Made by a program: the position numbers and the translations under genes. Below are positions 1 to 60,949 of a stretch of DNA of 64,000 nt, one piece after another. The notes below the pieces were generated by a model. That model was not told where the DNA came from. It ran no database searches and saw only the letters and a list, made by a program, of their open reading frames with translations. The first letter of the stretch is position 1. Every line of letters starts with the position of its first letter. The stretch is taken from positions 219,374 through 283,373 of IMG/VR virus record IMGVR_UViG_3300049460_000312. One strand, 5' to 3'.

Positions 1-437
1 CGTCATTTGTAATTTGTTGGTACGGATACTACACCAGAAGGAAATCATCTGGACCACACTTTTGTGCTCAGTGGTAAGCTTCACGCACTGCAGGTCTCGT
101 GTCTTCGCCGGTTCCAGGCGAACACTGTGACCACTGGCGCTGATAAAGCTCACCAAAGCGTGGCCTGCCAAGAACTTGGCGGTGTCACTTGAAAACAGGT
201 TGGACAAGAAACCCATGGTTGACTCCAAAAAGAAAAACCGGTGAAAAGAACGGGGAAGAGCTTGCGCCCTTCCCCGTATAAAGGCGTAACCCAGAAGGGA
301 AACGCAATCGAGAAAGAACCAGAAGCAGCCACATGGATGCTTATGTTCAGGTTTGTTATATGTGGTTGAAAATTATTAGACTTTAATCCAGCGGCATAAC
401 AGCCAGAGCAGGCGTATGCCCGCTCTGGCGAAAGCCT

Positions 438-1220
438 TTACTGAACGTGCGCCTGGGCGACCTGCCGGGCGAAATAGACCGTGTGGGTCGACTCCGTCGG
501 ATTGCGATCCTTGATACTCGCGATCACGCGTACCAGAACCTGTGGTGCTACCGCCATATTCTTGCCTGCGTCCGGAGTGGCATCCATCACAAACGACAGC
601 GACACGCGAATCGACCCGCTGGTCTGGTTCTGCGCGCAATGCTCGGTGATATACTTCTCATTGTTTTTCAGGCAATGGTAGAGGTAGACACCCAGTTGCT
701 CGACGCTATCGTTCATGCACATCCAGCCGTCCTGCGCCATGGCCGCAACCATCTCTTCTGTCAACACGGTCATAACAGAATAGTCCATCTCCAGTTGCTT
801 AAGCTCATGCCAGCGGTTCTTCTCGTAGCCCGCCACATTGCTGTAGTTGGTCACGCGCTGTTCACCCTCCGCTGTGTAATGGGTGGTGGTCACCAGGTTC
901 AGGCGCACCGGCCCCTTGCGGACGCCGGAGAGTTTGCGGATATGGCTCAGAATCGAAATGCAGGCACTACGCGGATCTTGCGGTTCGCTGATCGCCTGGA
1001 CATACGAGGACAGATCGATGAAGGGAATCGCTCGTGCGCTCGTCTGCTGCATCTCCTCAAGACTGTCAACCACTGATTCCTTGCGATCTTCCGGTACGGT
1101 TTCCTTCTTAGTGGCAGGCACTTCACGAGCACGATCGGGCAAGACATAGCCCGCGATAAACAGCAGCAGGTAGCCGAAGAACAGCCGGATACCGCGCACA
1201 CACCTGGCGATGGTTTTCAT
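438..1220 (-). CDS. Hypothetical protein with an N-terminal transmembrane segment
   Basis: 260 aa ORF; hydrophobic LFFGYLLLFIAGYVLP; ATGA overlap with the upstream NTase. Confidence 0.75.
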   Translation of the reverse strand: MKTIARCVRGIRLFFGYLLLFIAGYVLPDRAREVPATKKETVPEDRKESVVDSLEEMQQTSARAIPFIDLSSYVQAISEPQDPRSACISILSHIRKLSGVRKGPVRLNLVTTTHYTAEGEQRVTNYSNVAGYEKNRWHELKQLEMDYSVMTVLTEEMVAAMAQDGWMCMNDSVEQLGVYLYHCLKNNEKYITEHCAQNQTSGSIRVSLSFVMDATPDAGKNMAVAPQVLVRVIASIKDRNPTESTHTVYFARQVAQAHVQ

Positions 1221-2164
1221 TTGCCTCCTTCGAGCAACATTTCAGCAAAGCGAGTGTTCAGCCTGTTGATCTGCTTGAGATAGTTTTCCATACTCCGGTC
1301 CGCCAGATGCGGCGGGACGATGATCACCGGACGGCTCAGGACCAACGGGTGCAGCTTATCGATCACCCGAATACAGGTCGGGTGCCAATAGCTGTGACCG
1401 TTCTTGAACAAGCCATCGCGCAGATGCGGCAACATATTGCGTTGCAGGAACGAGACGTTGACATCCTGACCCACGTCCTGCAGATAGCCGTCGATGAGTT
1501 CGGCTAGGGTGAGGGTTTTGTTCAGCACCAGCTCGCTCACAAAGCGCTGGCTCGTCACTGCCCAGCCAAGGAACAACCGGTAGATCGCATCCGAGATTTC
1601 CGAATGCTTGATCTCACCGCCTGACTTCATCAAGCCCCGGGCTTTGCTGGCGCGCCCGGCACAGGAATGCCGATAGCGCTCTGCGTCGAACGTAGAGGCT
1701 GCGAACGTATCGATCTGCTTGGTAAGGACGTCATTGCCCATGAAGTCGATCACGAGGTTGTCGTGCCCGATGCGGAAGTCCAGATTACCCTTGCCGATTT
1801 CCCGCACAAAGAAGTCCAGGCTGACGAAGTTCAACTGCACCTCTTTTTCATCCACGGTGAAGTCTGCGTGCGTGCGTTGAAGCACTGACAGCGTGACTTG
1901 GGGCGGCACCGATTCTTCTTCAGCTACCTGACGCGTATCGGCGGGGATCATCCGGGCATACTGGGAGATACCGCCCAGATACACCACGTACAGATCGATG
2001 TCCGATTCCGGACCCGCATAGCCTTTGGCCTGTGAGCCGAAAACTCCGGCATAAACCGGACGGATGTGAAAACGATCGCACTGCGCCTGGATCTCACGCA
2101 TCAACATCCCGTAAAACGCTTCGCCGAACTGACGTTCGAACGTCTTGTTATCGAAAAGCCCCAT
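1217..2164 (-). CDS. Pol-beta superfamily nucleotidyltransferase (PF10127/RlaP-like)
   Basis: GVFGSQAKGYAGPESDIDLYVVY matches GS-x3-G-x5-SDxD; start placed at MGLFDNK after a GAGG RBS. Confidence 0.8.
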   Translation of the reverse strand: MGLFDNKTFERQFGEAFYGMLMREIQAQCDRFHIRPVYAGVFGSQAKGYAGPESDIDLYVVYLGGISQYARMIPADTRQVAEEESVPPQVTLSVLQRTHADFTVDEKEVQLNFVSLDFFVREIGKGNLDFRIGHDNLVIDFMGNDVLTKQIDTFAASTFDAERYRHSCAGRASKARGLMKSGGEIKHSEISDAIYRLFLGWAVTSQRFVSELVLNKTLTLAELIDGYLQDVGQDVNVSFLQRNMLPHLRDGLFKNGHSYWHPTCIRVIDKLHPLVLSRPVIIVPPHLADRSMENYLKQINRLNTRFAEMLLEGGK

Positions 2165-2217
2165 ACCACCCTCAATGTGTTCAGATGTTAAACGGGCCGC
2201 GCGAGGCGGCCCGGGTC

Positions 2218-3156
2218 TCATGCAGCCAACAACTCCGTCGGCGGCGTTTCGGCTTTGCTCTTGCCGTTACGCTCGTCTTCGTGATCGAGCAACTCCTGGT
2301 AGAGGTCGATCATTTCGCGAGTTTCTTCGGGCAGGTTCGGATACTGCTTCGGATGCTCGCGCAGGTAGTCCGTCGCCAGACGCAGTACGCGGCCGGTGAA
2401 CTGCCTGAGCAGGCTGACGGCGTTCTCGTTGATGCCCTGCGGCATGTCGAACGGGCTACGTTCGGTACGCGCACGAATCACGCCCGTGACTTCCCGAAGA
2501 AAGCCTTCGGACATCGAGGTGGCCCAATTGGCACGATTCATTTCGATCAGTTCCTGAATCGTACGGCAATGCTGCTTGTCGCCATCCAGGTAGGCGAGCA
2601 TGCGGTGCGCCGACCAGAGCGTACCGAGGTAAGTGCGTTCCTGCTTGTACTCACGGCCATGATCGTCAATGGCTTGTAGCGTGCGCATACCGTTGGTGAT
2701 ATGTTCACCGCAGCGATGCACCAGGTTCGGCAACAGGAAATAATCCTGCGCGATGTCCTCGAACAGGAACCGTACCTGAGCGTTGTCCGCGGCGAAGCGT
2801 TCGTACGCCATCAGCGAGAAGGTGCTCGCATTCATGATGCCGCGCAAGAGACTACGCATATCCAGCAGCGATACCATGATCTGCCAGCCGAGCTCCCGCG
2901 ACATCTGCGTGGAGAGCTTGGCGAGCTTGTCGCGCCGGTCATCCAGCGTGCCTTCGAAAATCGGCGCGTTGGACATGTTCAGGTAGTCCGAGACGGGTCG
3001 GTTCAGCAGGAAGCAGATGTCCGTGTCGGAGTTCGGGTCATTGAAGCCGCGCAGGATCGATCCGTGGATCGTCGCTGCCGTTACTTCCAGTCCCAGGTGA
3101 CGAGAGACTAGGGCGGTGGCTTCAGCAAGTCGTTGCTTTTTGAGTTGTTCGTTCAT
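2218..3156 (-). CDS. Pol-beta superfamily nucleotidyltransferase (PF10127/RlaP-like), paralogue
   Basis: IHGSILRGFNDPNSDTDICF motif; LLDMRSLLRGIMNAS resembles the family WDLRKAL-type segment. Confidence 0.8.
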   Translation of the reverse strand: MNEQLKKQRLAEATALVSRHLGLEVTAATIHGSILRGFNDPNSDTDICFLLNRPVSDYLNMSNAPIFEGTLDDRRDKLAKLSTQMSRELGWQIMVSLLDMRSLLRGIMNASTFSLMAYERFAADNAQVRFLFEDIAQDYFLLPNLVHRCGEHITNGMRTLQAIDDHGREYKQERTYLGTLWSAHRMLAYLDGDKQHCRTIQELIEMNRANWATSMSEGFLREVTGVIRARTERSPFDMPQGINENAVSLLRQFTGRVLRLATDYLREHPKQYPNLPEETREMIDLYQELLDHEDERNGKSKAETPPTELLAA

Positions 3157-3209
3157 TTTGGTATCCTCGATGTGGTTTTTGGCAATAGACCTAGATCCAT
3201 TCTACGTTT

Positions 3210-3716: not shown

Positions 3717-3732
3717 AGTAAGCAATAAAAGG

Positions 3733-4140: not shown

Positions 4141-4313
4141 CGTTCTTCCTCATGTGGGTGCATGCGATAAAATAACCCTCCGAGTAAGAATTAGCAGCGC
4201 GCCCGCATTCTGTAGCCGCCACAACCCAATCCCGGTGGCTAGTTACATTCCATTTAACCTGGGTCGCTGTTCAGCTCGTTGGTTGAGGAAGTGCCGGTAA
4301 CGCCCGCAGTACC

Positions 4314-4384
4314 TGCTCTGGTAGTAGATTGGAATAACGCCGGTTACGACCCGGAAAAGTGGGTTCGATTCCCATCCAGGCAGT
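4314..4384 (+). tRNA. Degenerate tRNA-Arg(ACG)-like element
   Basis: Canonical T-arm GTGGG-TTCGATT-CCCAT; anticodon arm CCGG-TTACGAC-CCGG; bulged acceptor TGC(T)CTGG/CCAGGCA; weak D-stem; no encoded CCA. Confidence 0.55.
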
Positions 4385-4391
4385 GTCACAG

Positions 4392-4437
4392 CAAAAAAAA
4401 AAATAAAGCAGGGAGGCCGAAGCCTCCCTTTATGCCG
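4392..4437. terminator. Bidirectional intrinsic terminator
   Basis: A-run, then AGGGAGGC-CGAA-GCCTCCCT hairpin, then TTATGCCG. Confidence 0.8.
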
Positions 4438-4441: not shown

Positions 4442-4792
4442 TTACCAGTAACGGGCATCCCCGGGCTTCTCGTACACCTGCACCTCGTGGTCTGCGTTAC
4501 GCGTGTAGCGATGCAGTTCTTTCGAGACCTGTTGACGATAAGTCCGTTCTGCCGTATTGCGATAGCTCCAGGGCACACTCGCGTGAAGGTATTCCTTGGT
4601 CAGGCAATCGCCGCGCTTCTTGCGAAGTTTGGCGTACTCGACTTTGGACAGCATTTCCTGCGCCGCCTTCCATCCGCCCGATGCGACTGGAATCCAGTGC
4701 AGATCCCACAGATAACCGCCGTCCACCGGACGGGAGTTATCGATGCAGTATTCGAGTGTACGGCTGGCGTTGCTGCGATAGGTGCGAGACAT
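4442..4792 (-). CDS. Small basic phage protein (MSRTYR... type)
   Basis: 116 aa, Arg/Lys rich. Confidence 0.65.
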   Translation of the reverse strand: MSRTYRSNASRTLEYCIDNSRPVDGGYLWDLHWIPVASGGWKAAQEMLSKVEYAKLRKKRGDCLTKEYLHASVPWSYRNTAERTYRQQVSKELHRYTRNADHEVQVYEKPGDARYW

Positions 4793-5555: not shown

Positions 5556-5634
5556 GGTAAAACTCCTTTGTGGTGAGAGAACAGAGGGATTGAACGGCAT
5601 AAAGGCCCAGAGCCAAAGCCCTGGGCAGACAGCA

Positions 5635-7720: not shown

Positions 7721-7816
7721 GTTGTTCTCACAGGGGATATTAGGATTGGTCTACTAACAAATCCCCTTGGTCGGTAAAAAGACGGCATAAGAGGCGGGTT
7801 ACCCCGCCCCTCATGT

Positions 7817-10173: not shown

Positions 10174-10181
10174 GTAATATA
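10174..10181 (-). promoter_or_regulatory. Putative phage early promoter TATATTAC
   Basis: Exact phiKZ early consensus on the minus strand, about 30 nt upstream of the ATG at 10143. Confidence 0.65.
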
Positions 10182-10243: not shown

Positions 10244-10279
10244 CGGCATAAAAAAGGGAGAGGGCCAATGCCCTCTCCC
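10244..10279 (-). terminator. Intrinsic terminator closing the ORF-free region
   Basis: GGGAGAGGGC-ATTG-GCCCTCTCCC followed by TTTTTTATGCCG. Confidence 0.85.
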
Positions 10280-11020
10280 GGAGTGCATTGCCTCGCGGGA
10301 ACGTTCCACCAAACGTCCCGAGATTCAACCCGCAAACAAACCACAGCTGAACGACGCCACCAGTCTTAGTGAGCGCGGGGAGGGGATACGGGCCCATCTA
10401 CCTATCTTACCCCTCCCCACCGCCTCGTCCCAGGTCACCATCAAACCTGAGCGGAGTGTGGCTAAGCCCACTCACTACCCTCATTGTTCTCCGCACCCGT
10501 AAGTGCATTGGGTCAGCTCCCAACTCAATGAAGGAACTACGCTCGTTCTAACGTAGCTTTGCTTTTTACCGCATACCAAGATAGCGGTGTTGACCTCTCC
10601 TCGTTTGCTTGGGTCTTCGAGGTTTCGCAATACCCATATCCTTCTCAGATAGGCTGGTGCTGCTGAGGTAGAGACATGCTGACGCCACTGGCGGACCTGC
10701 ACTTTTCCCTACGCTGCTGCTACCCAGGCTAGCCTTCTAAACTGATCCATGACCTTTGCATGGCTGCGTCGGCTCGTCTGCATTTGACTTTAATTGTCGA
10801 TCCCAACCGCTACACTACCTTAGTTCGTTCGAGGTGTTGTCGGTCTTACTTATCCTACTACTGGTCCGATGACTCGGGTGGAGGAACCAGTGGCAGGCTG
10901 CCGCTGTAGGAGGAGCTGGTGATCGCCTGTCACTCACGCCAGACGAAAAATGTTACCGTTCAGAAAGATAGTCCACGAGCTGCCGAACATAAAAGTTCCA
11001 TGCTGGCTTAGGGGGACATA
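10280..11020 (-). ncRNA. Candidate large structured ncRNA (about 740 nt)
   Basis: No credible ORF; more than 10 hairpins, some with UACG/CUUG-type loops; most G-U wobbles favour the minus strand; lies between a TATG motif at 11016-11019 and a terminator. Confidence 0.55.
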
Positions 11021-11097
11021 ATAATTAGGGAACTTTTTTACAGTTATCATACATAACAGCAAAAAAAAAGAACTCAGGTGGCCGAAGCCACCCAAGC

Positions 11098-11226
11098 TTA
11101 CTTGAGCCAGTGCACCAAGAGAGCAATCGCACCCAGAGCTACAACCAGCTTCAGCTTGTTCTTCTGCACTTGCACGTAGAACTCGGGTTCTTCTACGAGG
11201 CGAACGAAGACGGTACGCTTTTTCAT
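11098..11226 (-). CDS. 42-aa single-pass membrane peptide
   Basis: Manual translation MKKRTVFVRLVEEPEFYVQVQKNKLKLVVALGAIALLVHWLK; ATGA coupling; terminator follows. Confidence 0.6.
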   Translation of the reverse strand: MKKRTVFVRLVEEPEFYVQVQKNKLKLVVALGAIALLVHWLK

Positions 11227-11734: not shown

Positions 11735-11779
11735 TTTTCTTTCCTTTGGTGTTGGTGACAAAAAATAACAGCATAAAGG

Positions 11780-12020
11780 AGCGCAGGGGGCGGCGATGAC
11801 CCGAGGCTAACCCGTCCCCGTCCACCGCCGCCCTTCTCCTACACCGCCCTCCCCGGATTTGCCGGACGGAGGACTATTTTCGATCGCATGCACGAAAGGT
11901 CGCACTTCCGGATACTCCCGCGTAGGAAGCAATCCGACATGGCGTACCGCACGCGACCGACGTCGCGGGAACTCCCGCGAGGGTCAGCGCCGTCGGGTCT
12001 CTCTTCCCGGGGGCGCCAGA
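11780..12020 (-). ncRNA. Candidate structured ncRNA downstream of tRNA-Asn (about 240 nt)
   Basis: Consecutive GC-rich stems: TCGCGGG-AGTT-CCCGCGA; CCCTCC..CCGG-CAAAT-CCGG-GGAGGG; GGGCGGCGGTG/CATCGCCGCCC. Confidence 0.5.
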
Positions 12021-12040
12021 CTCTTTACTACAACAATACT

Positions 12041-12116
12041 TGGCTCCCCGGGTTGGACTTGAACCAACGACCAACGGATTAACAGTCCGCTACTCTACCG
12101 ACTGAGCTACCAGGGA
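12041..12116 (-). tRNA. tRNA-Asn(GTT)
   Basis: Full cloverleaf, anticodon loop CTGTTAA, encoded CCA. Confidence 0.97.
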
Positions 12117-12132
12117 TCTACTACAGAAACAA

Positions 12133-12209
12133 TGGCGCGGCGTAGGGGACTTGAACCCCTGACCCCTGGCGTGACAGGCCAGTACTCTAACCAACTGAGC
12201 TAACACCGC
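12133..12209 (-). tRNA. tRNA-Asp(GTC)
   Basis: Full cloverleaf, anticodon loop CTGTCAC, encoded CCA. Confidence 0.97.
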
Positions 12210-12219
12210 AAACTACAAA

Positions 12220-12590
12220 ACAAGAGGCTATACTCCCAGGGGCGACAGTTCGTTCTCTCAACCGCCGCTAACGCCGCAGTCAACTCTCGATCCTGCCCTA
12301 GGGGCTATAGTCTCGCTGCTAACGAGTTAATAACTTGAAGTTCCGATTGATGGTCTTCCCTTCCTACACTTTGACGCAAGGGTATCAGCCTTCGTCTCAT
12401 TGAGTCCCCGATGGGCGCGCCTCCTTTCGGTTAGCGCGCATGAGGCGATCGCGGCCTTTCGCCGCGCTCTACGTAGTTTCCGGCACCGTCCCCTTCGGGC
12501 GGCCGTGTCTTTGCCAGAACGCCAAAGTAGCTGCTTCAGGATTCTGGTAGAGCCGGATGCGAATGCTAGTGTGAGTCTTCGCATGTAATT
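12220..12590 (-). ncRNA. Candidate structured ncRNA upstream of tRNA-Asp (about 370 nt)
   Basis: GAAA/GAAG-capped stems, nested helices, a long 3' stem pairing 12224-12242 with 12296-12314; no credible ORF. Confidence 0.55.
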
Positions 12591-12742
12591 GACCGAACGT
12601 GTATTTTTTCACTCAATCAGGTTAGGAGAAAGCCTTGAGTAAACCCACGATAATCACCTCGACAATGATGCAGGCTAACAGCAAGTCATCGAGGTCACAC
12701 GAGGGTTCGTTCCAGGGTTCGTTCGGATCTTCGACCATCGGG

Positions 12743-13450: not shown

Positions 13451-13575
13451 GGTGTACTCGGATTAGTTTGAGAGAGATGTTACGAAGGATATAGCTCGGG
13501 GTAAAAAGCGGCATAAAGAGGGAATCCAGCGACTCCCTCTTTGAATGTTTTGGTCTTTCCCGTAAAAGTGCGTTG

Positions 13576-13926: not shown

Positions 13927-14024
13927 TTTTTATTAACTCCTACGCAGTTGGTCTTAACTGCATAAGATGGACAGCATAAAGCGCAGGCCGAAACCCGCGC
14001 TTTATTGACAGGCGAGCGACTCGC

Positions 14025-15612: not shown

Positions 15613-15620
15613 GTAATATG
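15613..15620 (-). promoter_or_regulatory. Putative early promoter CATATTAC
   Basis: Matches the recurring motif. Confidence 0.55.
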
Positions 15621-15722
15621 TCGCCAAAGAATTCTAGACTTCACTTGTACATGCCATGGTTCTAGCAGGTAAAAAGTTTATAGCAGCATAGAGCGGGGCT
15701 TTTGGCCCCGCTCCTTATGCCG

Positions 15723-17896: not shown

Positions 17897-18042
17897 AACT
17901 CGCTTGTCGAAAACAAAAAAAAAATAAAGACTCACGGGTTGTGAGCCAAACTCATAGTAATCGACGGCATAAAGGGGAGAGGTGTGACCCTCTCCCCCGA
18001 GCTTCAAGAACCTACGAGAAAAGCTTACACCGATCTACTACG

Positions 18043-20235: not shown

Positions 20236-20332
20236 TGTGTTTCTCCTAGGGGTTTACATGTAGGTGATATATGGTCAGAAGAAGTTAGAAATGGCTCGAC
20301 GGCATAAAAGCCAGCCCGTAGGCCGGCTTTTA

Positions 20333-22536: not shown

Positions 22537-22626
22537 GGCTTTATAAGAAGGGATTGAACATAAAATTACAGGACTAAATACACTTTATGAGCCGTCTCAC
22601 CTTTCTTCCTTTCCCCGGGGTCTACC

Positions 22627-23217
22627 ATGTTGTCCAAGCTGTCTCTCCTTGCACGGTTAGCCGTGATTGCTGTCGCCATCTATCTGTTTCTTGCTGAGAC
22701 CACCGGACCCGTGATGGTCTACTGGGCTGTTGGCGCGGGGATCTGTTTTGCCACACTGTTCAAGCTCAAACGCAAGACCCCGAAGGGCGAGGAAGTGACG
22801 ATGCCCAAGCAGATTCCGACCACCGATGGCCGTGTCGCTTATGCTGGTAAGGCAAAAGCGTTCACCACGTACTTCGGCGGCCGGGACATCGATCCCGAAT
22901 CGATCAGTATGGCAGCGATGCGCCGGGAAGACGGTTATATCGTGGCATTGGATAAGCAGGGTGGCTACGACGAGCTCGTCTTCGTGCTGTTTAACATGAA
23001 GCTGATTCGTGAGCCTGGCAGGCACACCACCATGAATTGGGAGAAGGGTTACCTGACATCGGAAGGCCGATTTGTCTCAGGCAAGAAGGTAATCAAAATC
23101 GCCCAACTCGCCGGCCAGTTGCCAAACGACACGCCGATGGAGCGTCTGTTCTCCATCAGGGATTTGTACCCGGACGAGCCGACTCTGGCCCGGCAGGCAA
23201 TGGCTGTAGTGGGTTAA
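22627..23217 (+). CDS. Membrane-anchored hypothetical protein
   Basis: Two N-terminal hydrophobic segments; C-terminal GYLTSEGRFV...IAQLAGQL...LFSIRDLY phage motif; convergent terminator at 23224-23261. Confidence 0.7.
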   Translation: MLSKLSLLARLAVIAVAIYLFLAETTGPVMVYWAVGAGICFATLFKLKRKTPKGEEVTMPKQIPTTDGRVAYAGKAKAFTTYFGGRDIDPESISMAAMRREDGYIVALDKQGGYDELVFVLFNMKLIREPGRHTTMNWEKGYLTSEGRFVSGKKVIKIAQLAGQLPNDTPMERLFSIRDLYPDEPTLARQAMAVVG

Positions 23218-23261
23218 TCGGAATAAAAAGCAGAGAGCGACCGCTCTCTGCTTTTATGTCG

Positions 23262-23939
23262 TTAAGATGTAAAGGGCGTAGCCTGAGGAGTAAAGGCGCT
23301 GGTGTAAAGAGCCTTCCCTTTTGAAAGACGAACCTCGTCCATATAACCTGGAAAGGTGCCGTTACCATTCTGTACGTTACCAATGATGAGTGGGCCCGTA
23401 TTTACCCCAAACGTTTGTGAGCTCACAAACGAACCCACTAACGCCCCGTTATACCATGCAGACCACGTGTTACCCGATCGCGTAACAGCAAAGTGAAACC
23501 ACTGCCCGGTGACGAGAATGTCATTTACCAACAACTGGGCCTGTCCGGCATTGCCTGCGAGCTTCAGATAAATTTTACGCTGATAGAATTCAATCCAGCA
23601 TCGATTAACCTGATTCATGTCGGGCGATTTTTCTATAAAAACGGTGTCGTTCGCCACCGTCGTCAGATAACACCAGGCCTCCATGGTACAGTCTGCATTG
23701 AACTGCAGGTCAGCTGCATTGGGAGTGGTGACCATCGCGTTCGCGCCAGTCGGCAATAGCGAGGAACCCCCGAACCTGGCCTGAACGGTGCTGAGCGCCG
23801 CACCATTCGAAGCCGTCATCGGGTGACCGTACACGTCAACGATATTGGTTGAGCCGTTTGCCCCGTCGGCATGCAGGAGAAGGGAGGTAAAATTAGCCGC
23901 GACTACCTGACTGCGAGTCGCTAGAAGGGATTCAAACAT
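23262..23939 (-). CDS. LamG/concanavalin-like jelly-roll virion protein
   Basis: LLLHADG...CTMEAW...WFHFAVTR...GYMDEVRLSKG.ALYT..FTP; N-terminus MFESLL. Confidence 0.8.
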   Translation of the reverse strand: MFESLLATRSQVVAANFTSLLLHADGANGSTNIVDVYGHPMTASNGAALSTVQARFGGSSLLPTGANAMVTTPNAADLQFNADCTMEAWCYLTTVANDTVFIEKSPDMNQVNRCWIEFYQRKIYLKLAGNAGQAQLLVNDILVTGQWFHFAVTRSGNTWSAWYNGALVGSFVSSQTFGVNTGPLIIGNVQNGNGTFPGYMDEVRLSKGKALYTSAFTPQATPFTS

Positions 23940-25965: not shown

Positions 25966-26203
25966 ACGGAGAGGCCCAGGAGAATTTAGTTATACACATA
26001 CGATTTACGGCATAAAGACCCGGCTTTGTGCCGGGCTTTTATGGGTAGCTTAAAGAGTGAACGGTGCGGTGGGTGGGGGGAAATGGCAGCCGTATAGACA
26101 GCCACGTCTTTCATGATCTGCACTTCATCGATGTAACCCGGAGAAACTCGTTGATAGAAATTACGGCACAAGGGTCGGGAGAACCCGACCCTATACCTGA
26201 GCT

Positions 26204-27364: not shown

Positions 27365-27448
27365 AATGCGCACCGGCTAGAATAGAGGACATACGATTTG
27401 CGGCATAAAAGCCCGGGTTGCCCCCGGGCCCTTATGTCCACTAACTGA

Positions 27449-30508: not shown

Positions 30509-30591
30509 GGTGCATTCCCGAGAAAGCTTACATACGATTTGCGGCAGCATAAAAGGCCGGGGGTAACCCCGGCCCTTATGACTTTTAACGC

Positions 30592-35454: not shown

Positions 35455-35617
35455 ATTCGACCTTGTCTAGCTTGGTGGAAAAAACAAAAAAACGACCCGT
35501 TAGCGAAACGGGGCGCCAATTAAGTCTATAAAATTGCGGCAAAAAAATACAGTCGCTACCACAGCATAAAGGCCCGGGTTTCCCCGGGCCTCGTATGTCG
35601 GAGTTATGCGATACGCA

Positions 35618-39669: not shown

Positions 39670-39927
39670 AATCGTGTTGTTTTGGAGAGAAATGGTTAAA
39701 TGTGTGCGTACCTATGGGAGAATGATGGCTTCTCCAACACACTAAGGAACTGCCAGGTAATTTTACCATGACGCATAAGGCGCCCATGTGACACGGACGG
39801 GATTCGTCGTGTCTTTAGAGGGCATGGTTATACCCTCCTCTGGGCTATCGGCATAGCATACAGACAAGAAAAAAATAAGGCGGCATAAAACCCCGTGAGC
39901 CACGAGGGCTCACAGGGCGAGGGGCCT

Positions 39928-42334: not shown

Positions 42335-42434
42335 TTCTCCTCCTCAAGATAATAGTCAAAAGATCCCATCTCGTGGTAAATTCGGGCATTGCCGGCATAA
42401 AAGCCGAGAGAGCCGCAGCTCTCCCAGCCAGCAA

Positions 42435-45939: not shown

Positions 45940-46029
45940 TTTGCGTTTAGCTCCTACACACTTTAATGCCCGTCAGAGTAAAAAGCGGCATAAGCCCCAG
46001 AGAGCCGAAGCCCTCTGGGGAACCGCGTT

Positions 46030-47622: not shown

Positions 47623-47670
47623 CTAGAATAGCAGGTAGTTGCGACTACCTGCCGCTTTATGCCGTCAACC

Positions 47671-49524: not shown

Positions 49525-49783
49525 CTGGTCGTCCTGAGGATAACAGCAGGGCATGACATGCATGACGCCCGGCACCCTGTGGCAGGAACAGGTACAGCCG
49601 CCATAGCTAGGATCACAACCCTCGGGTAATAAGGGAGGAGGCAACATCGTGAGTGGAAATAGTTGGTACACAACAACTTCCAGATGGGTTAAAAAACGAC
49701 TGCGGCGGCATAAAGGCCAGGAAGCCATCGCTTCCTGGCCTGTGCCCTGCACGTAGCAGTGTGCTGGACTTTTGTAAGTGTTG

Positions 49784-50606: not shown

Positions 50607-50614
50607 GTAATATG
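50607..50614 (-). promoter_or_regulatory. Putative early promoter CATATTAC
   Basis: Matches the recurring motif. Confidence 0.55.
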
Positions 50615-50690
50615 TGGCTGGCGAATCTTTAGCTACAGTCAACGACCTACGGCATAAGGGCCAGCTTGCGCCGGCCCCTATACCAGATAA

Positions 50691-52704: not shown

Positions 52705-55077
52705 TTACCAGCTGAACTTCTCCAGACCCAGATTAAGCGGCGCAGCGGTGACTGCCGGTTGCTTGTTTGCAGGCTGGTTCACAGCAATAGCGACACCTAC
52801 GTCTTCCACCGAGACGGCGCGGTTGATGTGCGGGAACTTGGCGTAGCGTTGTGTTTCCGATTCCTCCCGTCCCCACAGTGTGCCATCTGCGAAGTAATGG
52901 AACGGATCGAGTCCCAGGCTTTCCCCAGCCATGTGCCCCGGATGCTTCTCCGGCGTAATCGACGGCTCCCCCGGCTCGGTCAACGAAATCGAGCGCATGG
53001 TCTGCTCATTGATCTCGGTGGTGTTGTTCATCAACCCCCAGAGCTCAACGCCGTCTTCCGAGTCCAACCACTCCAGGGCTGCGGCGCCTGACGTACCAGC
53101 GGTGCCGAGCATCTGCTCCACCTGACTCTTGGACCAGGCCATGATGTCGAGACTGCGAGTGGAGATATTAGGCTCCTTACCGGTATCCAGATACACGTCC
53201 CAGATCTGCACGACTTCAGTCTGACCCAGACGATCCACCCGGGAGCAGGCCTGCTCGTACTCATGATCGCGGAACGGCGCGTTCAGGAACACAACGGTGT
53301 TCGCCATAATCAACGGCACCGCAGTGGAGAGCGACTGCAACGTCGCAATCAATGGATTGGCGCGACCGTCCTTGTCAAACCGCCCCACGATCTGCGGCAG
53401 CTCACCATTGGTCTGGCCATAGACCTTAAGCGGCGCGGCGCCTTCCTTCGTGAGGATCTCCGCACAGCGATCGACCACTTCCACGTAGCTCGTGAACACC
53501 ACGGTCTTCTTCACCGAGTTCTCGATGATGTCCACCAGGTTGGTGTCGAACTTCTCGCCGGTCTGCACATCCGTGACACTGTAACGGTTCCAGGCGTTGA
53601 GCATGTCCACGTTACACTGAGTGCGGCGCTTGCCGAGAATCCGGCCGAGCGCTTCACCCTGCACTTTGAGCTTTACGTACTTGTAGACCGAACGTGCGTT
53701 CTTGAAGTCTTCCTTCAGTTCCCGCGGCAACACCGGCAGGATCTTGTTCTTCTCAAAGGCGTTGCAGAAGATCGGCTCTTCCTTGTGGACCATCGGGTCG
53801 TAGTTCGTGTGCAACAGATTGGCCGTGCGCACGTACTCGTCAAAGAGCTTGACTTCCGCCGTAGTCTTGATCGTGCGTTCGTAAGCGCGCAAGCCAGCCC
53901 GGTACTGAGCCACGTACTTGTCCATGTTCTGCTTGTAATACTCCAGCCGCTCCTTGACGAACTTCGCCATGTCCTTGCTGATCGCATCCAACGTGTAATC
54001 GTGCCCGTTGGGGAGCGTCACGTCCACCCGGTAGTGTTCCACCGTATTGCCAACGATCTGCTTCTTGTCGATCTTGAAGGTCATGTAACCAAGGCGGTGC
54101 GCCAGGATGTCCAGTCCTCGTGCCGACGATAGACCAAAGATGGCCTTGAAACGTTCTTCCGCTTCCTCGTCAAAGTACGGATCGATCGAACGCAGGATAG
54201 GAATGACTTCCGAACCCATCGCCTTGATCGGCGTACCCGAGGACCACAACGTGTCCTGGCTGTGCGTGACCTTGACCAGCTTGAGGAACAGCTCAGTGCG
54301 CAATGACTTCAGCTCATTCAGATTGTGCGACTCATCCAAAATGATGTTGATCTGCTTGTCCTTGAACGCCGGATCACTGAAGAAGTCCAAAATCAATTGC
54401 AGCTGCTCGTAGTGGGCCACGTAATAGCGGCAACCCTTCTTGAGCGGTTCACCGGAGGTCGACTTCCAGTACGGTTGCTTGGCCTTGAACACCCAGTCGA
54501 GCGTATCGGCCCAGACGCGATCCACCGCGTTCTTCGGCACGATACAGATGGTGATGTCCGTGTTCAGACACTCGGAGAGGGCAATACCAGTGATGGTCTT
54601 ACCCGAGCCCGGTGCAGCTCCGAGGATCGAACCCTTCAGCTGCCAGCGCGAGACCATCTCGTTGTAGTACGCGAGGAACTCGTTCTGGTGCGGCAGCAGC
54701 GTCACTGACAGACGATCCAGCGCTTTCAGATCCAGACGGTTCGAGTATTTATCCTCGAAGGCGGTCTTCATCCAGATGTTCGTTTCCATCTGGTTCAGGA
54801 TGTCTTGCACCGCCGAGCGATTGATACGTGCCCGGCGTTCACCCATCAAACGCTTACAGACGTAGTAGAAGTCCGGCGCAAAGAACGGGTGCATGTCCAG
54901 CTGACGACTTTTGATCTTGCGGAACATGTTGTTCGAGATCTTGGACGTCTTCCACAGCTTGTCGATCTCGTACAGAAAAGGTGGCACTTTCATGCCTAAA
55001 ATGCGCACGGTCTTGGAGTCTTCTTGCTTGACCTCCACGCCCGTGAAGAAACTTGTGATGTTATCGATGTCGAACAT
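52705..55077 (-). CDS. SF2 (SNF2-like) helicase/ATPase
   Basis: GAAPGSGKT, IILDESH, SGTP, C-terminal QACSRVDRLGQ. Confidence 0.88.
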   Translation of the reverse strand: MFDIDNITSFFTGVEVKQEDSKTVRILGMKVPPFLYEIDKLWKTSKISNNMFRKIKSRQLDMHPFFAPDFYYVCKRLMGERRARINRSAVQDILNQMETNIWMKTAFEDKYSNRLDLKALDRLSVTLLPHQNEFLAYYNEMVSRWQLKGSILGAAPGSGKTITGIALSECLNTDITICIVPKNAVDRVWADTLDWVFKAKQPYWKSTSGEPLKKGCRYYVAHYEQLQLILDFFSDPAFKDKQINIILDESHNLNELKSLRTELFLKLVKVTHSQDTLWSSGTPIKAMGSEVIPILRSIDPYFDEEAEERFKAIFGLSSARGLDILAHRLGYMTFKIDKKQIVGNTVEHYRVDVTLPNGHDYTLDAISKDMAKFVKERLEYYKQNMDKYVAQYRAGLRAYERTIKTTAEVKLFDEYVRTANLLHTNYDPMVHKEEPIFCNAFEKNKILPVLPRELKEDFKNARSVYKYVKLKVQGEALGRILGKRRTQCNVDMLNAWNRYSVTDVQTGEKFDTNLVDIIENSVKKTVVFTSYVEVVDRCAEILTKEGAAPLKVYGQTNGELPQIVGRFDKDGRANPLIATLQSLSTAVPLIMANTVVFLNAPFRDHEYEQACSRVDRLGQTEVVQIWDVYLDTGKEPNISTRSLDIMAWSKSQVEQMLGTAGTSGAAALEWLDSEDGVELWGLMNNTTEINEQTMRSISLTEPGEPSITPEKHPGHMAGESLGLDPFHYFADGTLWGREESETQRYAKFPHINRAVSVEDVGVAIAVNQPANKQPAVTAAPLNLGLEKFSW

Positions 55078-55201
55078 AGCGCGCTCGGGGAGGAATATTT
55101 GTTCAAAAGATTGAGCGGGACTATGATGACAAAAAAAAAATAAAGCAGCGACATAACGGAGAGAAGAGAGCCTTGTGCTCTCTTCTCTCCTAGCGAATTG
55201 C

Positions 55202-55675
55202 TTAAAACTTATTTGCACTCCAGCGACTGCTAACCGAAGCTCTTCCAGCTGGCGTGAATTCTTTCAGCACCGACATGCAGATGAAAAGAGATTTCTCACA
55301 CTCTCGGCGCTCGGCCACAGGGAGACTCTCTTCTCCAAACTTGCTCGCCGCGATCGCCCACGGCGGCGAGCAGTCGTTGTAGTAGTATTCAGCGCTCACG
55401 ATGTCCGGGACCCATTCATTTCGGTCAGCGTACGAGAGCGTGCCGTTGATGCGTTGAAGAATAGGCTGATACTCACGATTGAAAATGACTTCGCGCCCGC
55501 TCTTGCATGTCCACTTACCGTAAGGGAGTGTGCGACGCACCGAATGCACGATCATAAAAGCAATCGGATTCGTCTCAGGGCATGCCTGCGCGTAGCTCTC
55601 ACGAATCTCTTTCAATTTGAGCTTTTCAAAGCGCTCACGGGTTTCCGGGGCGTGCGCGGTAATAATTTCATCCAT
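55202..55675 (-). CDS. Hypothetical protein
   Basis: PYG.W.C..GREV.FNR.Y.PI phage motif. Confidence 0.7.
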   Translation of the reverse strand: MDEIITAHAPETRERFEKLKLKEIRESYAQACPETNPIAFMIVHSVRRTLPYGKWTCKSGREVIFNREYQPILQRINGTLSYADRNEWVPDIVSAEYYYNDCSPPWAIAASKFGEESLPVAERRECEKSLFICMSVLKEFTPAGRASVSSRWSANKF

Positions 55676-55749
55676 GGCATTTCTCCTTTTTAAATTACGA
55701 GAAAACAGCATAAGAGCCAGAGCCCGAAGGCCCCGGCTCCCATCAACAA

Positions 55750-58007: not shown

Positions 58008-58044
58008 GACAATGCTCCTGTCTAAAGGGGAGGAGGGGAGAAGC

Positions 58045-58386: not shown

Positions 58387-58440
58387 TGTTCTAGTACCTT
58401 ATTGAGAGATAGACGGACTACGTGTTTGTATTCCATCTTA

Positions 58441-58448
58441 GTAATATG
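58441..58448 (-). promoter_or_regulatory. Putative early promoter CATATTAC
   Basis: Matches the recurring motif. Confidence 0.55.
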
Positions 58449-58509
58449 GCTCTGAATATTTTTAGAAACCAACGGCATAAAGGAGAAGGCCGCAGCCCTC
58501 TCCTGGTGC

Positions 58510-58899: not shown

Positions 58900-58990
58900 T
58901 CGTAGTTCCTTGTCGGATACAAAGGTATCTTGTGTGTCAGGATAACCTGACCGTTTCAACCCACATCTAAGAACGGGTGCAGGAATGGCA

Positions 58991-59428
58991 ATGAGAATCG
59001 CCTTGTGGAAAGGCACCGACCCCGGCTTTGCCGGTATTCTCGATCGCGCGATTCGCTGGTGGACCAGTGGACCGTACTCGCATTGCGAGGTGATCTTTTC
59101 TGATGGCTGGACGGGCACCGCCTCTGCAGCCGATAAGGGCGTTGCACTGGTGCAGCGGCCCGAGGGGTATTACGACCCCAAGGATTGGGACTTCATCGAT
59201 CTCGAAGGAGACGAGCTAGCTGTACGTGCCTGGTACAAGCTGCATCGTGGTCTTCCATACGATCTGTTAGGCGACTTCGGTTTTGTCTGGCGACCGATAC
59301 GCGGGGATGGCGGAGCCTACTTCTGCTCCGAGGCTTTTGGTGCCGCGTTCCGCTGGCCAGACAGCTGGCAATTCAGTCCCAACCAGGTCGCGAGTGTGTT
59401 GCGCATTCCTAAATATGTTCCGGCCTGA
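58991..59428 (+). CDS. Permuted papain-like/NlpC-P60 (YiiX-like) cysteine hydrolase
   Basis: SGPYSHCEV (His), YDLLG and YFCSEA (Cys) in permuted order. Confidence 0.75.
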   Translation: MRIALWKGTDPGFAGILDRAIRWWTSGPYSHCEVIFSDGWTGTASAADKGVALVQRPEGYYDPKDWDFIDLEGDELAVRAWYKLHRGLPYDLLGDFGFVWRPIRGDGGAYFCSEAFGAAFRWPDSWQFSPNQVASVLRIPKYVPA

Positions 59429-59516
59429 TAAAAAGAAGCATTGATCGCCAGAGCGGGACGCCGCTCTGGCTTTTATGTCGGAATCCTATGTCATTCTTTG
59501 GGTTCCACTATACATC

Positions 59517-60221
59517 ATGCTTGAGGCGCTACTCACTGCCAAAAAAGCCGCAGCCCCCGCTGGGTTGCCACAGGATCAACCATTGATCGGCTTTAATTAC
59601 GACCGTAATGCCAGCACCGGCACCACGGCCATTACTTCCTCTCACTCCGCCAGCCAGTTGATTGTGCCGGGTGTAGCCGTCCCTGGTTACAACAAAGTGC
59701 TAAGCGCCAACGCGCAGTCCAATACCTTCACGAATTCATCGGCGATGAACGTAGGGACAGGTGACTTCACGATGGAGATGCGCGTGCTGTTAAAAGGCAC
59801 ATCCGGCTACGTACATCTTTGGTGGTCGACCAGTACGAACTCTACCGGTATCCGGATGGAAGATTCTGGCTTCGGCGATAAGCTCGCGTTCTTTATTAAT
59901 GCCAATACTCACGTCTTTTATGCCGGTGGTAAGACCAAAGCAGATATGCAGGTCTGGCGTCATTTGGTGCTGATGCGCAAGAACGGGAATGTCAGCTTTT
60001 ATTGGGATGGCGTACGCATCGGTATCGCTGCTGATCGTGGCGCTGACTTTTCGCAACAGGTATTGCCTGCTGCTGATGCACTATCGGCCTTCACGGCATC
60101 AGGCATTGGCTACGCAGGCTATGGTGCCGGGTACTGTGTAGCGGAATGGGCTTTTTACAACCGTGCCAAGTTTGACGGGATGACATCGTTCACACCGCCG
60201 TCTGGTTACATTGCGCCGTAA
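59517..60221 (+). CDS. LamG-like jelly-roll virion protein, displaced paralogue
   Basis: MLEALL N-terminus; GTGDFTMEM...WRHLVLMRKNG...FTPPS. Confidence 0.75.
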   Translation: MLEALLTAKKAAAPAGLPQDQPLIGFNYDRNASTGTTAITSSHSASQLIVPGVAVPGYNKVLSANAQSNTFTNSSAMNVGTGDFTMEMRVLLKGTSGYVHLWWSTSTNSTGIRMEDSGFGDKLAFFINANTHVFYAGGKTKADMQVWRHLVLMRKNGNVSFYWDGVRIGIAADRGADFSQQVLPAADALSAFTASGIGYAGYGAGYCVAEWAFYNRAKFDGMTSFTPPSGYIAP

Positions 60222-60251
60222 CAACAAAAAAAGAATGATCTCTCGCAGTAC

Positions 60252-60287
60252 AGGCTAGAGCGCCCGGGCGCTCTAGCCTTTATGCTG
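60252..60287. terminator. Convergent terminator; perfect 28-bp palindrome
   Basis: aggctagagcgccc/gggcgctctagcct followed by TTATGCTG. Confidence 0.75.
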
Positions 60288-60288
60288 C

Positions 60289-60801
60289 TTATTCGCGGAC
60301 TTGACCCACCAACAGCACGTCACCGTCCATCACGAAGAAACCAACCGCCGGTTCGTTCAGCGCGTTCTTCTTGGTGCCGACGATCATCGGTTCGTGACCG
60401 GTCATTTCCTTGATCGTCTGGAAGATCGAGTTGACTGCCGGAGCATACTTCTCACCCAGGCCCGACTCACGAAGCATTGCGTCGATCGTGAGATCGCGCA
60501 GCGTGTCCGGTTCTTCGGACAGCATCAGCTCGATCGCACGCCCAATCGTCACCGGCGCTCCATCCGTGTAGGTGGCTTGCGAGATGCGCAGATGGAAGCT
60601 GATCTCATCACTGTCGTCGTCCTTGAACTGGTTCATGCCGTAGTCAGCCACCACGAACTTGACGTGACGCGAATTCATCGTCTGACCTTGCTGACCACCG
60701 AGTTCGAATTCCACTTCGGCGGCACGGTTATAACGGGTCACCACACGAGCTTCACAACCCAGAACTGCTGCCAGCATATTGATCGACTTTGCGTATTCCA
60801 T
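60289..60801 (-). CDS. Hypothetical protein
   Basis: 170 aa ORF. Confidence 0.7.
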   Translation of the reverse strand: MEYAKSINMLAAVLGCEARVVTRYNRAAEVEFELGGQQGQTMNSRHVKFVVADYGMNQFKDDDSDEISFHLRISQATYTDGAPVTIGRAIELMLSEEPDTLRDLTIDAMLRESGLGEKYAPAVNSIFQTIKEMTGHEPMIVGTKKNALNEPAVGFFVMDGDVLLVGQVRE

Positions 60802-60949
60802 GATTCTTCCTGATTTAAAGTTAGATTGTTGAGCACCATGTAGGTATGGCTCTAGTTAGTATATGTGGTTAAAAGTTTTTTCATTTGACCCGCAGGCAAA
60901 AAAAAAGAACGGCATAAACGGAGAGGGCGCAGACCCTCTCCGTATGCAG

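What the first reader, a model, noticed from the sequence alone, without database searches (positions are those of the whole stretch)
392..60941. Hairpin + TTTATGCCG compound element at more than 25 gene boundaries
Seen: most intergenic hairpins end in a conserved tail TTTATG(C/T)(C/T)G rather than a plain U-tract, while the hairpin stems differ in sequence. At least 21 copies face minus and 6 face plus; some hairpins carry the motif on both sides (e.g. 15684-15722). Known: phiKZ-type non-virion RNAP late promoters centre on TATG. Inference: the element may couple termination with re-initiation, or be a binding site for a phage RNAP or termination factor, or an RNA processing signal. The extra (C/T)CG conservation is not explained by intrinsic termination.
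Basis: partly seen in the sequence, partly recalled or inferred. Interest (0 to 1): 0.62.

Follow-up and report, generated by a model that had tools for sequence, protein, structure and literature searches.

The report
Jumbo-phage terminator with conserved tail
The repeated "hairpin + TTTATGCCG" element is the transcription terminator typical of phiKZ-like giant phages, already mapped by RNA sequencing in two Pseudomonas relatives and found here in a Ralstonia phage; it ends genes rather than starting them, though how the conserved tail works is still unproven.

Summary
TTTATGYYG occurs 24 times in the window (1.28 expected) and 63 times in the 283-kb genome, and 52 of the 63 copies directly follow a strong hairpin (3% at random positions). 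With the core TATGYYG there are 29 good elements in the window and 85 in the genome. They follow gene ends on the sense strand. They occupy 18 of 21 convergent junctions, often on both sides, but only 1 of 21 divergent junctions. That is terminator behaviour, not promoter behaviour. Orthologous junctions in FLC4-3B and RP12 keep the tail while the stems change. The same motif (hairpin + TTATKYYGT) was published for 61 phiKZ terminators mapped by ONT-cappable-seq, and a closely similar one for 201phi2-1. The eight 201phi2-1 3' ends given in that paper all fall in the tail. Seven are the pyrimidine just before the invariant G, 8 nt past the stem. This suggests YY|G acts like the Y-1/G+1 core of an elemental pause at the release site. 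Separate promoter-like motifs (ATATTAC type and AATYNTATGT type) lie downstream of many tails. Verdict: a new member of a known terminator class. The role of the tail, and its TATG shared with late promoters, remains open.

The parts
392..431 (-). terminator element: 14-bp stem, then TATGCCG
   Evidence: tandem junction, 40 nt after the stop of the upstream minus gene
4410..4437 (+). terminator element, plus-facing tail TTTATGCCG; the same hairpin is followed by a long T-run on the minus strand
   Evidence: follows tRNA-Arg 4313-4384 (+); the minus side ends gene 4442-4792
5595..5626 (-). terminator element, TTTATGCCG
   Evidence: tandem; RBS and ATG about 40 nt downstream
7783..7811 (-). terminator element, stem then TATGCCG
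   Evidence: 28 nt after the stop
10244..10279 (-). terminator element, TTTTTATGCCG
   Evidence: a promoter-like ATATTAC lies downstream at 10174
13509..13541 (-). terminator element, TTTATGCCG
   Evidence: orthologues in FLC4-3B, FLC1-1B, RP12 and RP31 keep the tail with other stems
13972..14002 (-). terminator element, TTTATGCTG
   Evidence: compensatory stem change in the FLC orthologue
15684..15713 (-). terminator element, minus-facing tail CTATGCTG of a two-sided hairpin
15691..15722 (+). plus-facing tail CTTATGCCG of the same hairpin
   Evidence: FLC phages have an opposite-strand gene at this junction
17965..17998 (-). terminator element, TTTATGCCG
   Evidence: stems differ in the FLC and RP12 orthologues
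20300..20330 (-). terminator element, TTTATGCCG
23227..23261 (+). terminator element, TTTATGTCG, at a convergent junction
   Evidence: ends plus gene 22663-23217 and faces minus gene 23262-23939
26008..26039 (-). terminator element, TTTATGCCG, followed 2 nt later by AATCGTATGT
   Evidence: the FLC orthologue has an unrelated stem with the same tail and promoter-like motif
27401..27432 (-). terminator element, TTTATGCCG, followed by AATCGTATGT
30545..30577 (-). terminator element, TTTATGCTG, followed by AATCGTATGT
35562..35592 (-). terminator element, TTTATGCTG, after the RNR beta gene
35570..35600 (+). plus-facing tail CGTATGTCG of the same hairpin
   Evidence: degenerate in the orthologues (TATGACG, TATGTTG)
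39881..39918 (-). terminator element, TTTATGCCG
42393..42429 (-). terminator element, TTTATGCCG
   Evidence: different stem in FLC
45986..46020 (-). terminator element, CTTATGCCG
47629..47664 (+). hairpin with the tail only on the side antisense to the flanking minus genes
   Evidence: also antisense-facing in FLC4-3B, with an unrelated stem; purpose unexplained
49706..49741 (-). terminator element, TTTATGCCG
50650..50678 (-). terminator element, CTTATGCCG, followed by a promoter-like ATATTAC at 50607
55149..55190 (-). terminator element, 14-bp stem, GTTATGTCG
   Evidence: 72 nt upstream of the start of the helicase gene (52705-55077), 47 nt after the stop of gene 55202-55675
55706..55740 (-). 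terminator element, CTTATGCTG
58473..58504 (-). terminator element, TTTATGCCG, followed by a promoter-like ATATTAC at 58441
59447..59480 (+). terminator element, TTTATGTCG, followed by AATCCTATGT at 59482
60252..60287 (+). terminator element, TTTATGCTG, at a convergent junction
   Evidence: ends plus gene 59583-60221 and faces minus gene 60289-60801
60910..60943 (-). terminator element, TTTATGCCG
63597..63630 (+). doubtful hit, probably not a member
   Evidence: weak stem; the TATGCTG here is the reverse complement of the GCAGCATATTAC promoter-like motif at 63620 (-)

Best explanation
The element is the intrinsic-type transcription terminator of phiKZ-like (chimallivirus) jumbo phages. It is a GC-rich RNA hairpin of variable sequence followed by a short U stretch and a sequence-specific tail (UU)UAUGYYG. 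Shown here: it lies just downstream of gene ends on the sense strand, marks convergent junctions (often on both sides), and avoids divergent junctions. The tail is conserved at orthologous junctions while the stems are remodelled. The phage encodes the phiKZ-type non-virion RNA polymerase. Shown in relatives by others: RNA 3' ends map at this motif in phiKZ and 201phi2-1, and eight such 201phi2-1 terminators also stop expression in uninfected host cells. Inferred: transcription ends 8-9 nt past the stem at YY|G. The tail would then be the last RNA-DNA hybrid (UUUAUGYY), and the invariant G would be the next nucleotide that is not added. Y at the RNA 3' end and G at +1 are the two most conserved positions of the elemental pause signal of multisubunit RNA polymerases. 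So the tail most likely supplies a weak upstream hybrid plus a pause at the release point, replacing a long U-tract. The frequent CATAR or CGGCATAR on the 5' side lengthens the stem (motif B of 201phi2-1) and makes many copies bidirectional. My own estimates: that it is a terminator, about 0.9; that YY|G works as the pause and release site, about 0.5.
For: Enrichment and hairpin linkage. Every core position is constrained: 85 of 177 TATGYYG copies follow a hairpin, against a much lower share (3-10%) for each class of single-position variants; logo. Orientation: 73 of 85 elements follow a same-strand gene, 25 of these face a convergent gene, and 1 is in a promoter-only layout. Junctions: convergent 18/21, divergent 1/21, tandem 51/262. 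Motif-independent hairpins at tandem junctions: 33 carry the tail on the downstream side vs 8 on the upstream side, and only 7 carry a T-run. Orthologues: tail kept, 16 of 23 stems remodelled; in the other 7, nine double changes all stay paired. Published motif: BCCYCCCCHWWDGGGRRGGBYTTATKYYGT at 61 mapped phiKZ terminators, a closely similar motif A at 59 terminators in 201phi2-1, and stronger termination with the elongated stem. I saw the same tail directly in phiKZ DNA. The eight published 201phi2-1 TTS coordinates fall in the tail, seven on the Y before the G and 8 nt after the stem. Here the second Y lies 8-9 nt from the outermost G:C pair in 60 of 85 elements. Pause consensus g-11G-10t-3g-2Y-1G+1. 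gp123 and gp55 homologues are present. The tail is shared with RP12, Erwinia Simmy50 and Salmonella SA002 and absent from T4.
Against: There are no RNA data for this phage, so 3' ends here are inferred from relatives. ONT-cappable-seq has 1-2 nt uncertainty, and its 3' ends could be processed ends. Only Y-1 and G+1 of the pause consensus match: position -10 is mostly C, and -3/-2 read G and Y instead of t and g. The pause model does not explain why TATG itself is invariant or why it equals the late-promoter core. Eleven or twelve elements face antisense to the flanking genes, and one of them is conserved that way in FLC4-3B. The reporter assays in 201phi2-1 used host polymerase in uninfected cells, so they do not show what the phage polymerases need.
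Confidence: 0.8

Rival explanations
1. Terminator and promoter in one. After release at the tail the polymerase, or a new one, starts at the G of the tail's TATG, so the element insulates and restarts transcription between tandem genes.
For: The tail contains the exact phiKZ late-promoter core TATG with G as +1, and that core is read on the opened non-template strand by the gp123 beta-lobe pocket. This phage has a gp123 homologue. A terminating polymerase would already hold this DNA open. Forty-eight elements are followed by a same-strand gene, with a median of 85 nt to its start. Few other promoter motifs can be recognised in the genome.
Against: 86% of convergent junctions carry the tail, where restarting would give antisense RNA, and only 5% of divergent junctions do. 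TATG in divergent gaps is almost never followed by YYG. Separate promoter-like motifs sit 1-5 nt after several tails. P119L has no hairpin and resembles the AATYNTATGT motif instead. In phiKZ, TATG alone is not sufficient for promoter activity.
Confidence: 0.1
2. RNA processing or stability signal. Transcripts read through, an endonuclease cuts in or after AUGYYG or an exonuclease trims back to it, and the hairpin then protects the 3' end.
For: The published 3' ends cannot tell termination from processing. The tail is conserved as sequence, not as a pairing partner, which fits a protein reader. [quoted passage not shown]
Against: The 3' ends lie 8 nt past the stem, the classic intrinsic-termination distance. 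The elements block downstream reporter expression in uninfected cells. The conserved block is only about as long as one RNA-DNA hybrid plus the next base. The tail is shared by phages of four host genera, so a host nuclease site is unlikely.
Confidence: 0.07
3. A DNA-level repeat unrelated to transcription, such as a mobile palindromic element, a cruciform or protein-binding site for replication or packaging, or start codons of small genes.
For: Many copies are near-perfect palindromes, CGGCATAA-stem-loop-stem-TTATGCCG.
Against: Stems are unrelated in sequence, so they are not copies of a mobile element. Positions are orthologous between phages. The tail is polar with gene direction, 33 vs 8. 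RNA 3' ends map to it in relatives. The tail ATG opens only short frames, median 15 codons vs 26 for random ATGs.
Confidence: 0.03

Closest known systems
Conserved phiKZ terminator motif (Putzeys et al. 2024, Microlife 5:uqae002; PMC10914365) and motif A / motif B of 201phi2-1 terminators (PMC11512511)
   Same: GC-rich stem-loop directly followed by (Y)TTATKYYG(T). It is intergenic after gene ends and has bidirectional copies between convergent genes. A 5' complement lengthens the stem. The phage has phiKZ-type virion and non-virion polymerases. I saw the same tail directly in phiKZ and 201phi2-1 DNA.
   Different: The host is Ralstonia and the genome is 55% GC. The tail here is mostly TATGCCG (72 of 85 have C at the first Y), whereas phiKZ mostly has TATGTTG, TATGCTG or TATGTCG. 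Stems here do not follow the CCYCCCC...GGGRRGG bias. No RNA mapping exists for this phage.
Canonical bacterial intrinsic (rho-independent) terminator
   Same: GC-rich hairpin, a U-rich start to the 3' flank, release 7-9 nt after the stem, frequent A-tract/U-tract symmetry in bidirectional copies, and function with host polymerase in a reporter assay for the 201phi2-1 copies.
   Different: Only 2-3 U follow the stem, and then an invariant AUG-YY-G with a GC-rich distal hybrid. Plain T-run terminators are the minority here, 7 of 76.
phiKZ non-virion RNA polymerase late promoter (TATG, G = +1; Yakunina 2015; PMC12809450)
   Same: The four bases TATG.
   Different: Late promoters need no hairpin and lie upstream of genes, including in divergent gaps. 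Here the likely late promoters read AATYNTATGT, like P119L. The tail's YYG and its position after gene ends are terminator features.
Consensus elemental pause signal of multisubunit RNA polymerases (g-11G-10t-3g-2Y-1G+1; Larson 2014 as cited in PMC11077087)
   Same: A pyrimidine at the RNA 3' end and G as the next nucleotide, if the 201phi2-1 3' ends apply.
   Different: The upstream G-10 and the t-3 g-2 positions do not match in that register. Pausing by these phage polymerases has not been measured.

Membership tests
phiKZ-type (chimallivirus) conserved terminator motif | Stable GC-rich stem-loop immediately followed by (Y)TTATKYYG | tested here: met
   52 of 63 TTTATGYYG copies have an adjacent hairpin of dG <= -13 vs 3.2% of random positions; 85 hairpin+TATGYYG elements, logo
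phiKZ-type (chimallivirus) conserved terminator motif | Lies after gene ends on the sense strand; bidirectional copies between convergent genes | tested here: met
   73 of 85 follow a same-strand gene, median 46 nt from stop to TATG; 18 of 21 convergent junctions, 7 of them two-sided
phiKZ-type (chimallivirus) conserved terminator motif | RNA 3' ends accumulate at the motif during infection | not testable with these tools
   No RNA run was listed for this phage. Met in phiKZ and in 201phi2-1, where eight published TTS coordinates fall in the tail
phiKZ-type (chimallivirus) conserved terminator motif | Genome encodes phiKZ-type multisubunit RNA polymerases | tested here: met
   gp123 homologue E = 2.3e-59 and gp55 homologue E = 2.0e-71 in the same genome
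phiKZ-type (chimallivirus) conserved terminator motif | Optional 5' complement (motif B) that lengthens the stem | tested here: met
   CATAR or CGGCATAR on the 5' side in many copies; 24 of 40 convergent sides and 8 of 76 tandem hairpins carry the full CRRCATA
Canonical intrinsic terminator | Run of about 5-8 U directly after the hairpin | tested here: not met
   Only positions -2 and -1 and the T of TATG are T-rich; they are followed by invariant A, T, G, Y, Y, G
Canonical intrinsic terminator | Release 7-9 nt downstream of the stem | tested here: inconclusive
   The geometry fits (second Y 8-9 nt from the outermost G:C pair in 60 of 85), and relatives end there, but no 3' ends are mapped in this phage
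phiKZ nvRNAP late promoter | TATG core with G as the start site | tested here: inconclusive
   The TATG core is present in every tail, but start sites cannot be mapped here
phiKZ nvRNAP late promoter | Placed upstream of a same-strand gene, wherever transcription must begin, including divergent gaps | tested here: not met
   1 of 21 divergent junctions carries the element; 25 elements face a convergent gene; TATG in divergent gaps lacks YYG
Consensus elemental pause | Y at -1 and G at +1 relative to the RNA 3' end | tested here: inconclusive
   Holds if the 3' end is the second Y, as in 7 of 8 201phi2-1 sites; G-10 and t-3 g-2 are not matched; no pausing data exist

The most novel reading that the evidence does not exclude
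The tail is a dedicated stop signal read by the phage's own multisubunit polymerases. The same beta-lobe pocket of the gp123-type subunit that captures non-template TATG at late promoters would capture the TATG of the tail during elongation. That would stall the enzyme so the hairpin can release the RNA at YY|G. At some tandem junctions the polymerase, still bound, might restart. One protein pocket would then read both the start and the stop signals, which would explain why the four bases are shared and why the tail is conserved across phages of Pseudomonas, Ralstonia, Erwinia and Salmonella but absent from more distant nvRNAP-encoding phages.
Probability: 0.15. Interest if true: 0.75.

Novelty: new member of a known kind. 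Interest (0 to 1): 0.4.

Why it matters
Giant phiKZ-like phages transcribe their genomes with their own non-canonical polymerases inside a phage nucleus, away from host termination factors. How these enzymes stop is largely unstudied. This genome shows that the published terminator motif is not a Pseudomonas-phage peculiarity. Its tail is conserved, base for base, in a 55% GC Ralstonia phage and in Erwinia and Salmonella relatives whose polymerase subunits share only about 28-30% identity, which points to a conserved reader. The layout data separate the stop signal (TATGYYG after a hairpin) from the start signals (AATYNTATGT and ATATTAC types). That helps annotate operons in this phage group and gives compact insulator parts for engineering. 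The placement of published 3' ends at YY|G gives a concrete, testable model for the unexplained bases.

Tried and rejected
1. Expression data: no RNA sequencing run was listed for the window.
2. Supplementary tables with phiKZ and 201phi2-1 TSS/TTS coordinates are not held. I used the eight coordinates printed in the 201phi2-1 text instead.
3. First gene calls (longest ORFs) were too noisy, with wrong-strand shadow ORFs. I replaced them with a codon-usage and RBS caller. Its calls agree in order and strand with the FLC4-3B annotation in the syntenic part.
4. Strict ungapped pairing of the tail with the 5' flank gave only 35-60% paired positions. RNAfold pairs more, but that has no control, so I do not claim the whole tail is paired. 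The YY of the tail does not covary with the 5' RR.
5. The tail ATG as a start codon: rejected, because the frames are short.
6. Mobile repeat or DNA-level palindrome: rejected on polarity, unrelated stems and orthologous positions.
7. The lenient hairpin threshold (dG <= -8) flags 23% of random positions, so I quote the -13 threshold instead.
8. Raw 8-mer counts do not show the motif in AT-rich phiKZ (59 vs control 62); only the hairpin context does.
9. Rfam has no family for the element; only tRNAs were found in the window.
10. No complex or structure prediction and no large protein search was run, because no claim here rests on them.

Full report
**What the window is.** The window is the last 64 kb (219374-283373) of a complete 283,373-bp virus genome with direct terminal repeats. 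It is 55% GC. Its nearest annotated relatives are the Ralstonia jumbo phages FLC4-3B and FLC1-1B (72-81% nucleotide identity) and, more distantly, RP12 and RP31. The genome encodes homologues of phiKZ gp123 (E = 2.3e-59) and gp55 (E = 2.0e-71), two subunits of the non-virion RNA polymerase. Window genes include a helicase, an NAD-dependent ligase, ribonucleotide reductase, a tail fibre and several virion proteins. Almost all genes run on the minus strand, with isolated plus-strand genes. This gives 21 convergent and 21 divergent junctions genome-wide.

**Checking the observation.**
- TTTATGYYG occurs 24 times in the window against 1.28 expected. It occurs 20 times in the window's intergenic DNA against 0.23 in shuffled intergenic DNA, and 54 vs 0.91 genome-wide.
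- Genome-wide, 52 of 63 copies are directly preceded by a hairpin of dG <= -13 kcal/mol, against 3.2% of random positions.
- The three window copies without a real hairpin (2047, 45432, 59917) lie inside genes and match the chance expectation.
- The conserved core is TATGYYG. 85 of its 177 genomic copies follow a hairpin, whereas each class of single-position variants does so for a much lower share of its copies, 3-10%.
- The logo shows T at -1 and -2, an invariant TATG, C over T at the two Y positions, an invariant G, and then weak preferences for two more bases.
- The window has 29 good elements between 392 and 60943. One further hit is really a promoter-like motif read backwards.
- The stems are unrelated in sequence.

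**Terminator or promoter.** I asked where the element sits relative to gene direction.
- Of 85 elements, 73 follow a gene on the same strand, with a median of 46 nt from stop codon to TATG. Of these, 25 face a convergent gene, and only one is in a promoter-only layout.
- By junction, 18 of 21 convergent junctions carry it (7 on both sides), 1 of 21 divergent junctions does, and 51 of 262 tandem junctions do.
- In a hairpin set chosen without the motif, tandem gene-end hairpins carry TATGYYG on the downstream side 33 times and its complement on the upstream side 8 times. Only 7 have a plain T-run.
- Divergent gaps, which must hold promoters, often contain TATG (27 of 42 gene-facing directions). 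It is followed by YYG only in one long gap that probably hides a small gene.
- This pattern fits a terminator and does not fit a promoter.
- One plus-facing copy that looked antisense (4410-4437) in fact follows a plus-strand tRNA-Arg.

**Where the promoters are.** Two other motifs are enriched upstream of genes and always point at them.
- The first is AAAGATT, about 8 variable bases, then CAC-ATATTAC, with about 18 intergenic copies. It sits upstream of small hypothetical genes and resembles the TTAC-containing phiKZ early/middle promoter motifs.
- The second is AATYNTATGT, with 10 intergenic copies. It sits upstream of virion genes and closely resembles the model phiKZ late promoter P119L (ATTGCTATGT), which lies in a divergent gap with no hairpin.
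- Six of the ten AATYNTATGT copies lie 1-5 nt after a terminator tail, forming terminator-promoter cassettes that are conserved in FLC4-3B.
- So the tail's own TATG is not the obvious start site.

**Comparative evidence.**
- At orthologous junctions in FLC4-3B, FLC1-1B, RP12 and RP31 the tail is kept while the stems drift or are replaced.
- In 23 comparisons, 16 stems had a different architecture. In the 7 comparable ones, nine double substitutions all kept pairing, seven single changes kept pairing and three broke it. TATG was identical in all 23 comparisons, though only TATG-like anchors were accepted. G was identical in 20 of 23.
- Per 100 kb, hairpin sides followed by TATKYYG (with a reversed-pattern control) number as follows:

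| Phage | Hairpin sides with TATKYYG | Reversed-pattern control |
|---|---|---|
| This phage | 23 | 1 |
| RP12 | 30 | 1 |
| phiKZ | 20 | 2 |
| Erwinia phage Simmy50 | 21 | 3 |
| Salmonella phage SA002 | 15 | 1 |
| Erwinia phage pEa_SNUABM_54 | 4 | 0 |
| Serratia phage Moabite | 6 | 3 |
| RSL2 | 3 | 2 |
| Aeromonas phage PS1 | 1 | 1 |
| OBP | 0 | 1 |
| Klebsiella phage Miami | 3 | 2 |
| Pseudomonas phage HHBS47_1 | 3 | 1 |
| T4 | 2 | 1 |

- The tail is therefore a clade feature of part of the nvRNAP-encoding jumbo phages. It is independent of host and of GC content.

**What is already known.**
- Putzeys et al. 2024 mapped transcript ends in phiKZ by ONT-cappable-seq. They reported that 61 predicted intrinsic terminators share BCCYCCCCHWWDGGGRRGGBYTTATKYYGT, a stem-loop followed by a TTAT region. 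[quoted passage not shown]
- The 201phi2-1 study found a strongly similar motif A in 59 terminators. It often occurs with a motif B that lengthens the hairpin, and such double-motif terminators worked best in a reporter assay in uninfected Pseudomonas chlororaphis.
- The element in this window is the same thing, including the 5' CATAR/CGGCATAR extension.
- I found no paper in the held library that explains the tail or tests termination by the phage polymerases.

**How it probably works.**
- The 201phi2-1 paper prints eight TTS coordinates. I fetched those sites. All eight lie in hairpin + TTTATGNNG on the plus strand.
- In seven, the coordinate is the pyrimidine immediately before the invariant G, 8 nt after the stem. 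In the eighth it is one base earlier.
- In the present genome the second Y lies 8-9 nt from the outermost G:C pair in 60 of 85 elements.
- If release happens there, the conserved block equals the last RNA-DNA hybrid (UUUAUGYY) plus the next templated base (G).
- A pyrimidine at -1 and G at +1 are the most conserved positions of the elemental pause consensus g-11G-10t-3g-2Y-1G+1, which acts on diverse multisubunit polymerases.
- My reading is a pause-assisted intrinsic terminator. A few Us weaken the upstream hybrid, and Y|G holds the polymerase at the right distance for the hairpin to act.
- This part is inference. The other pause positions do not match, the method has 1-2 nt uncertainty, and the model does not explain why TATG is invariant.
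- The YY bases do not covary with the 5' flank, so they are conserved as sequence rather than for pairing.

**Rivals.**
- Termination coupled to restart at the tail's TATG remains possible at some tandem junctions. The layout statistics and the separate promoter motifs argue against it as the main function.
- A processing or stability signal is not excluded by the published 3' ends. The fixed 8-nt distance, the hybrid-sized conserved block and the reporter results argue against it.
- A DNA-level repeat and a start-codon reading are rejected.

**Verdict.** It is a new member, in a Ralstonia phage, of a terminator class published for phiKZ and 201phi2-1. The idea of a polymerase-read termination signal is compatible with the data. 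What remains open, and of interest to specialists, is the mechanism of the tail and the meaning of the TATG it shares with late promoters.

Noticed in passing
window 10174-10180, 15613-15619, 50607-50613, 58441-58447, 63620-63626 (all minus strand): Promoter-like motif AAAGATT, about 8 variable bases, then CAC-ATATTAC. There are about 18 intergenic copies genome-wide, all pointing at the downstream gene (mostly small hypothetical genes). It resembles the TTAC-containing early/middle promoter motifs of phiKZ. Several copies lie 20-40 nt after a terminator tail.
   Followed up: partly
window 22559-22567, 25997-26005, 27390-27398, 30531-30539 (minus strand); 59482-59490 (plus strand): Late-promoter-like motif AATYNTATGT upstream of virion genes. 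It is similar to phiKZ P119L (ATTGCTATGT). It often starts 1-5 nt after the terminator tail, and this cassette is conserved in FLC4-3B.
   Followed up: partly
window 4313-4384 (+), 12041-12116 (-), 12133-12209 (-): Three tRNA genes: Arg(ACG), only just above the Rfam threshold, plus Asn(GTT) and Asp(GTC). The tRNA-Arg lies on the minority plus strand and is followed by a two-sided terminator: the tail on the plus side and a long T-run on the minus side.
   Followed up: partly
window 47629-47664 (+); L001 about 1040-1083 (-): This hairpin has its tail only on the strand antisense to both flanking genes. It is conserved in that orientation in FLC4-3B and FLC1-1B, although the stem sequence is unrelated. 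It may stop antisense transcription or an unannotated transcript. Eleven or twelve such antisense-facing copies exist genome-wide.
   Followed up: no
window 10280-11098 and 11735-12620: These are gene-poor stretches around the tRNA genes, with only very short called ORFs. The first runs about 850 nt from the nearest upstream stop to the terminator at 10244. They may hold small genes or non-coding RNAs.
   Followed up: no
loci L050-L054 (phage OBP), L035-L039 (Serratia phage Moabite), L020-L024 (RSL2): More distant nvRNAP-encoding phages lack TATKYYG after hairpins. OBP and Moabite still show TTATG, TATGT and ATGTT enriched there, which suggests a variant tail. RSL2 shows other words (TCTTC, TCGTT).
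   Followed up: no
window 31298-34879 (-): The 1193-aa tail-fibre protein gives many repeated partial matches (up to 10 stretches) to tail-fibre families. It is the best-conserved stretch at DNA level with FLC4-3B, but only partly conserved with RP12 and RP31.
   Followed up: no
genome 122494-122997 (outside the window): This is the only divergent gap with terminator elements. It is 502 bp long and holds hairpin+TATGYYG copies on both strands, which suggests an unannotated small gene or RNA inside it.
   Followed up: no
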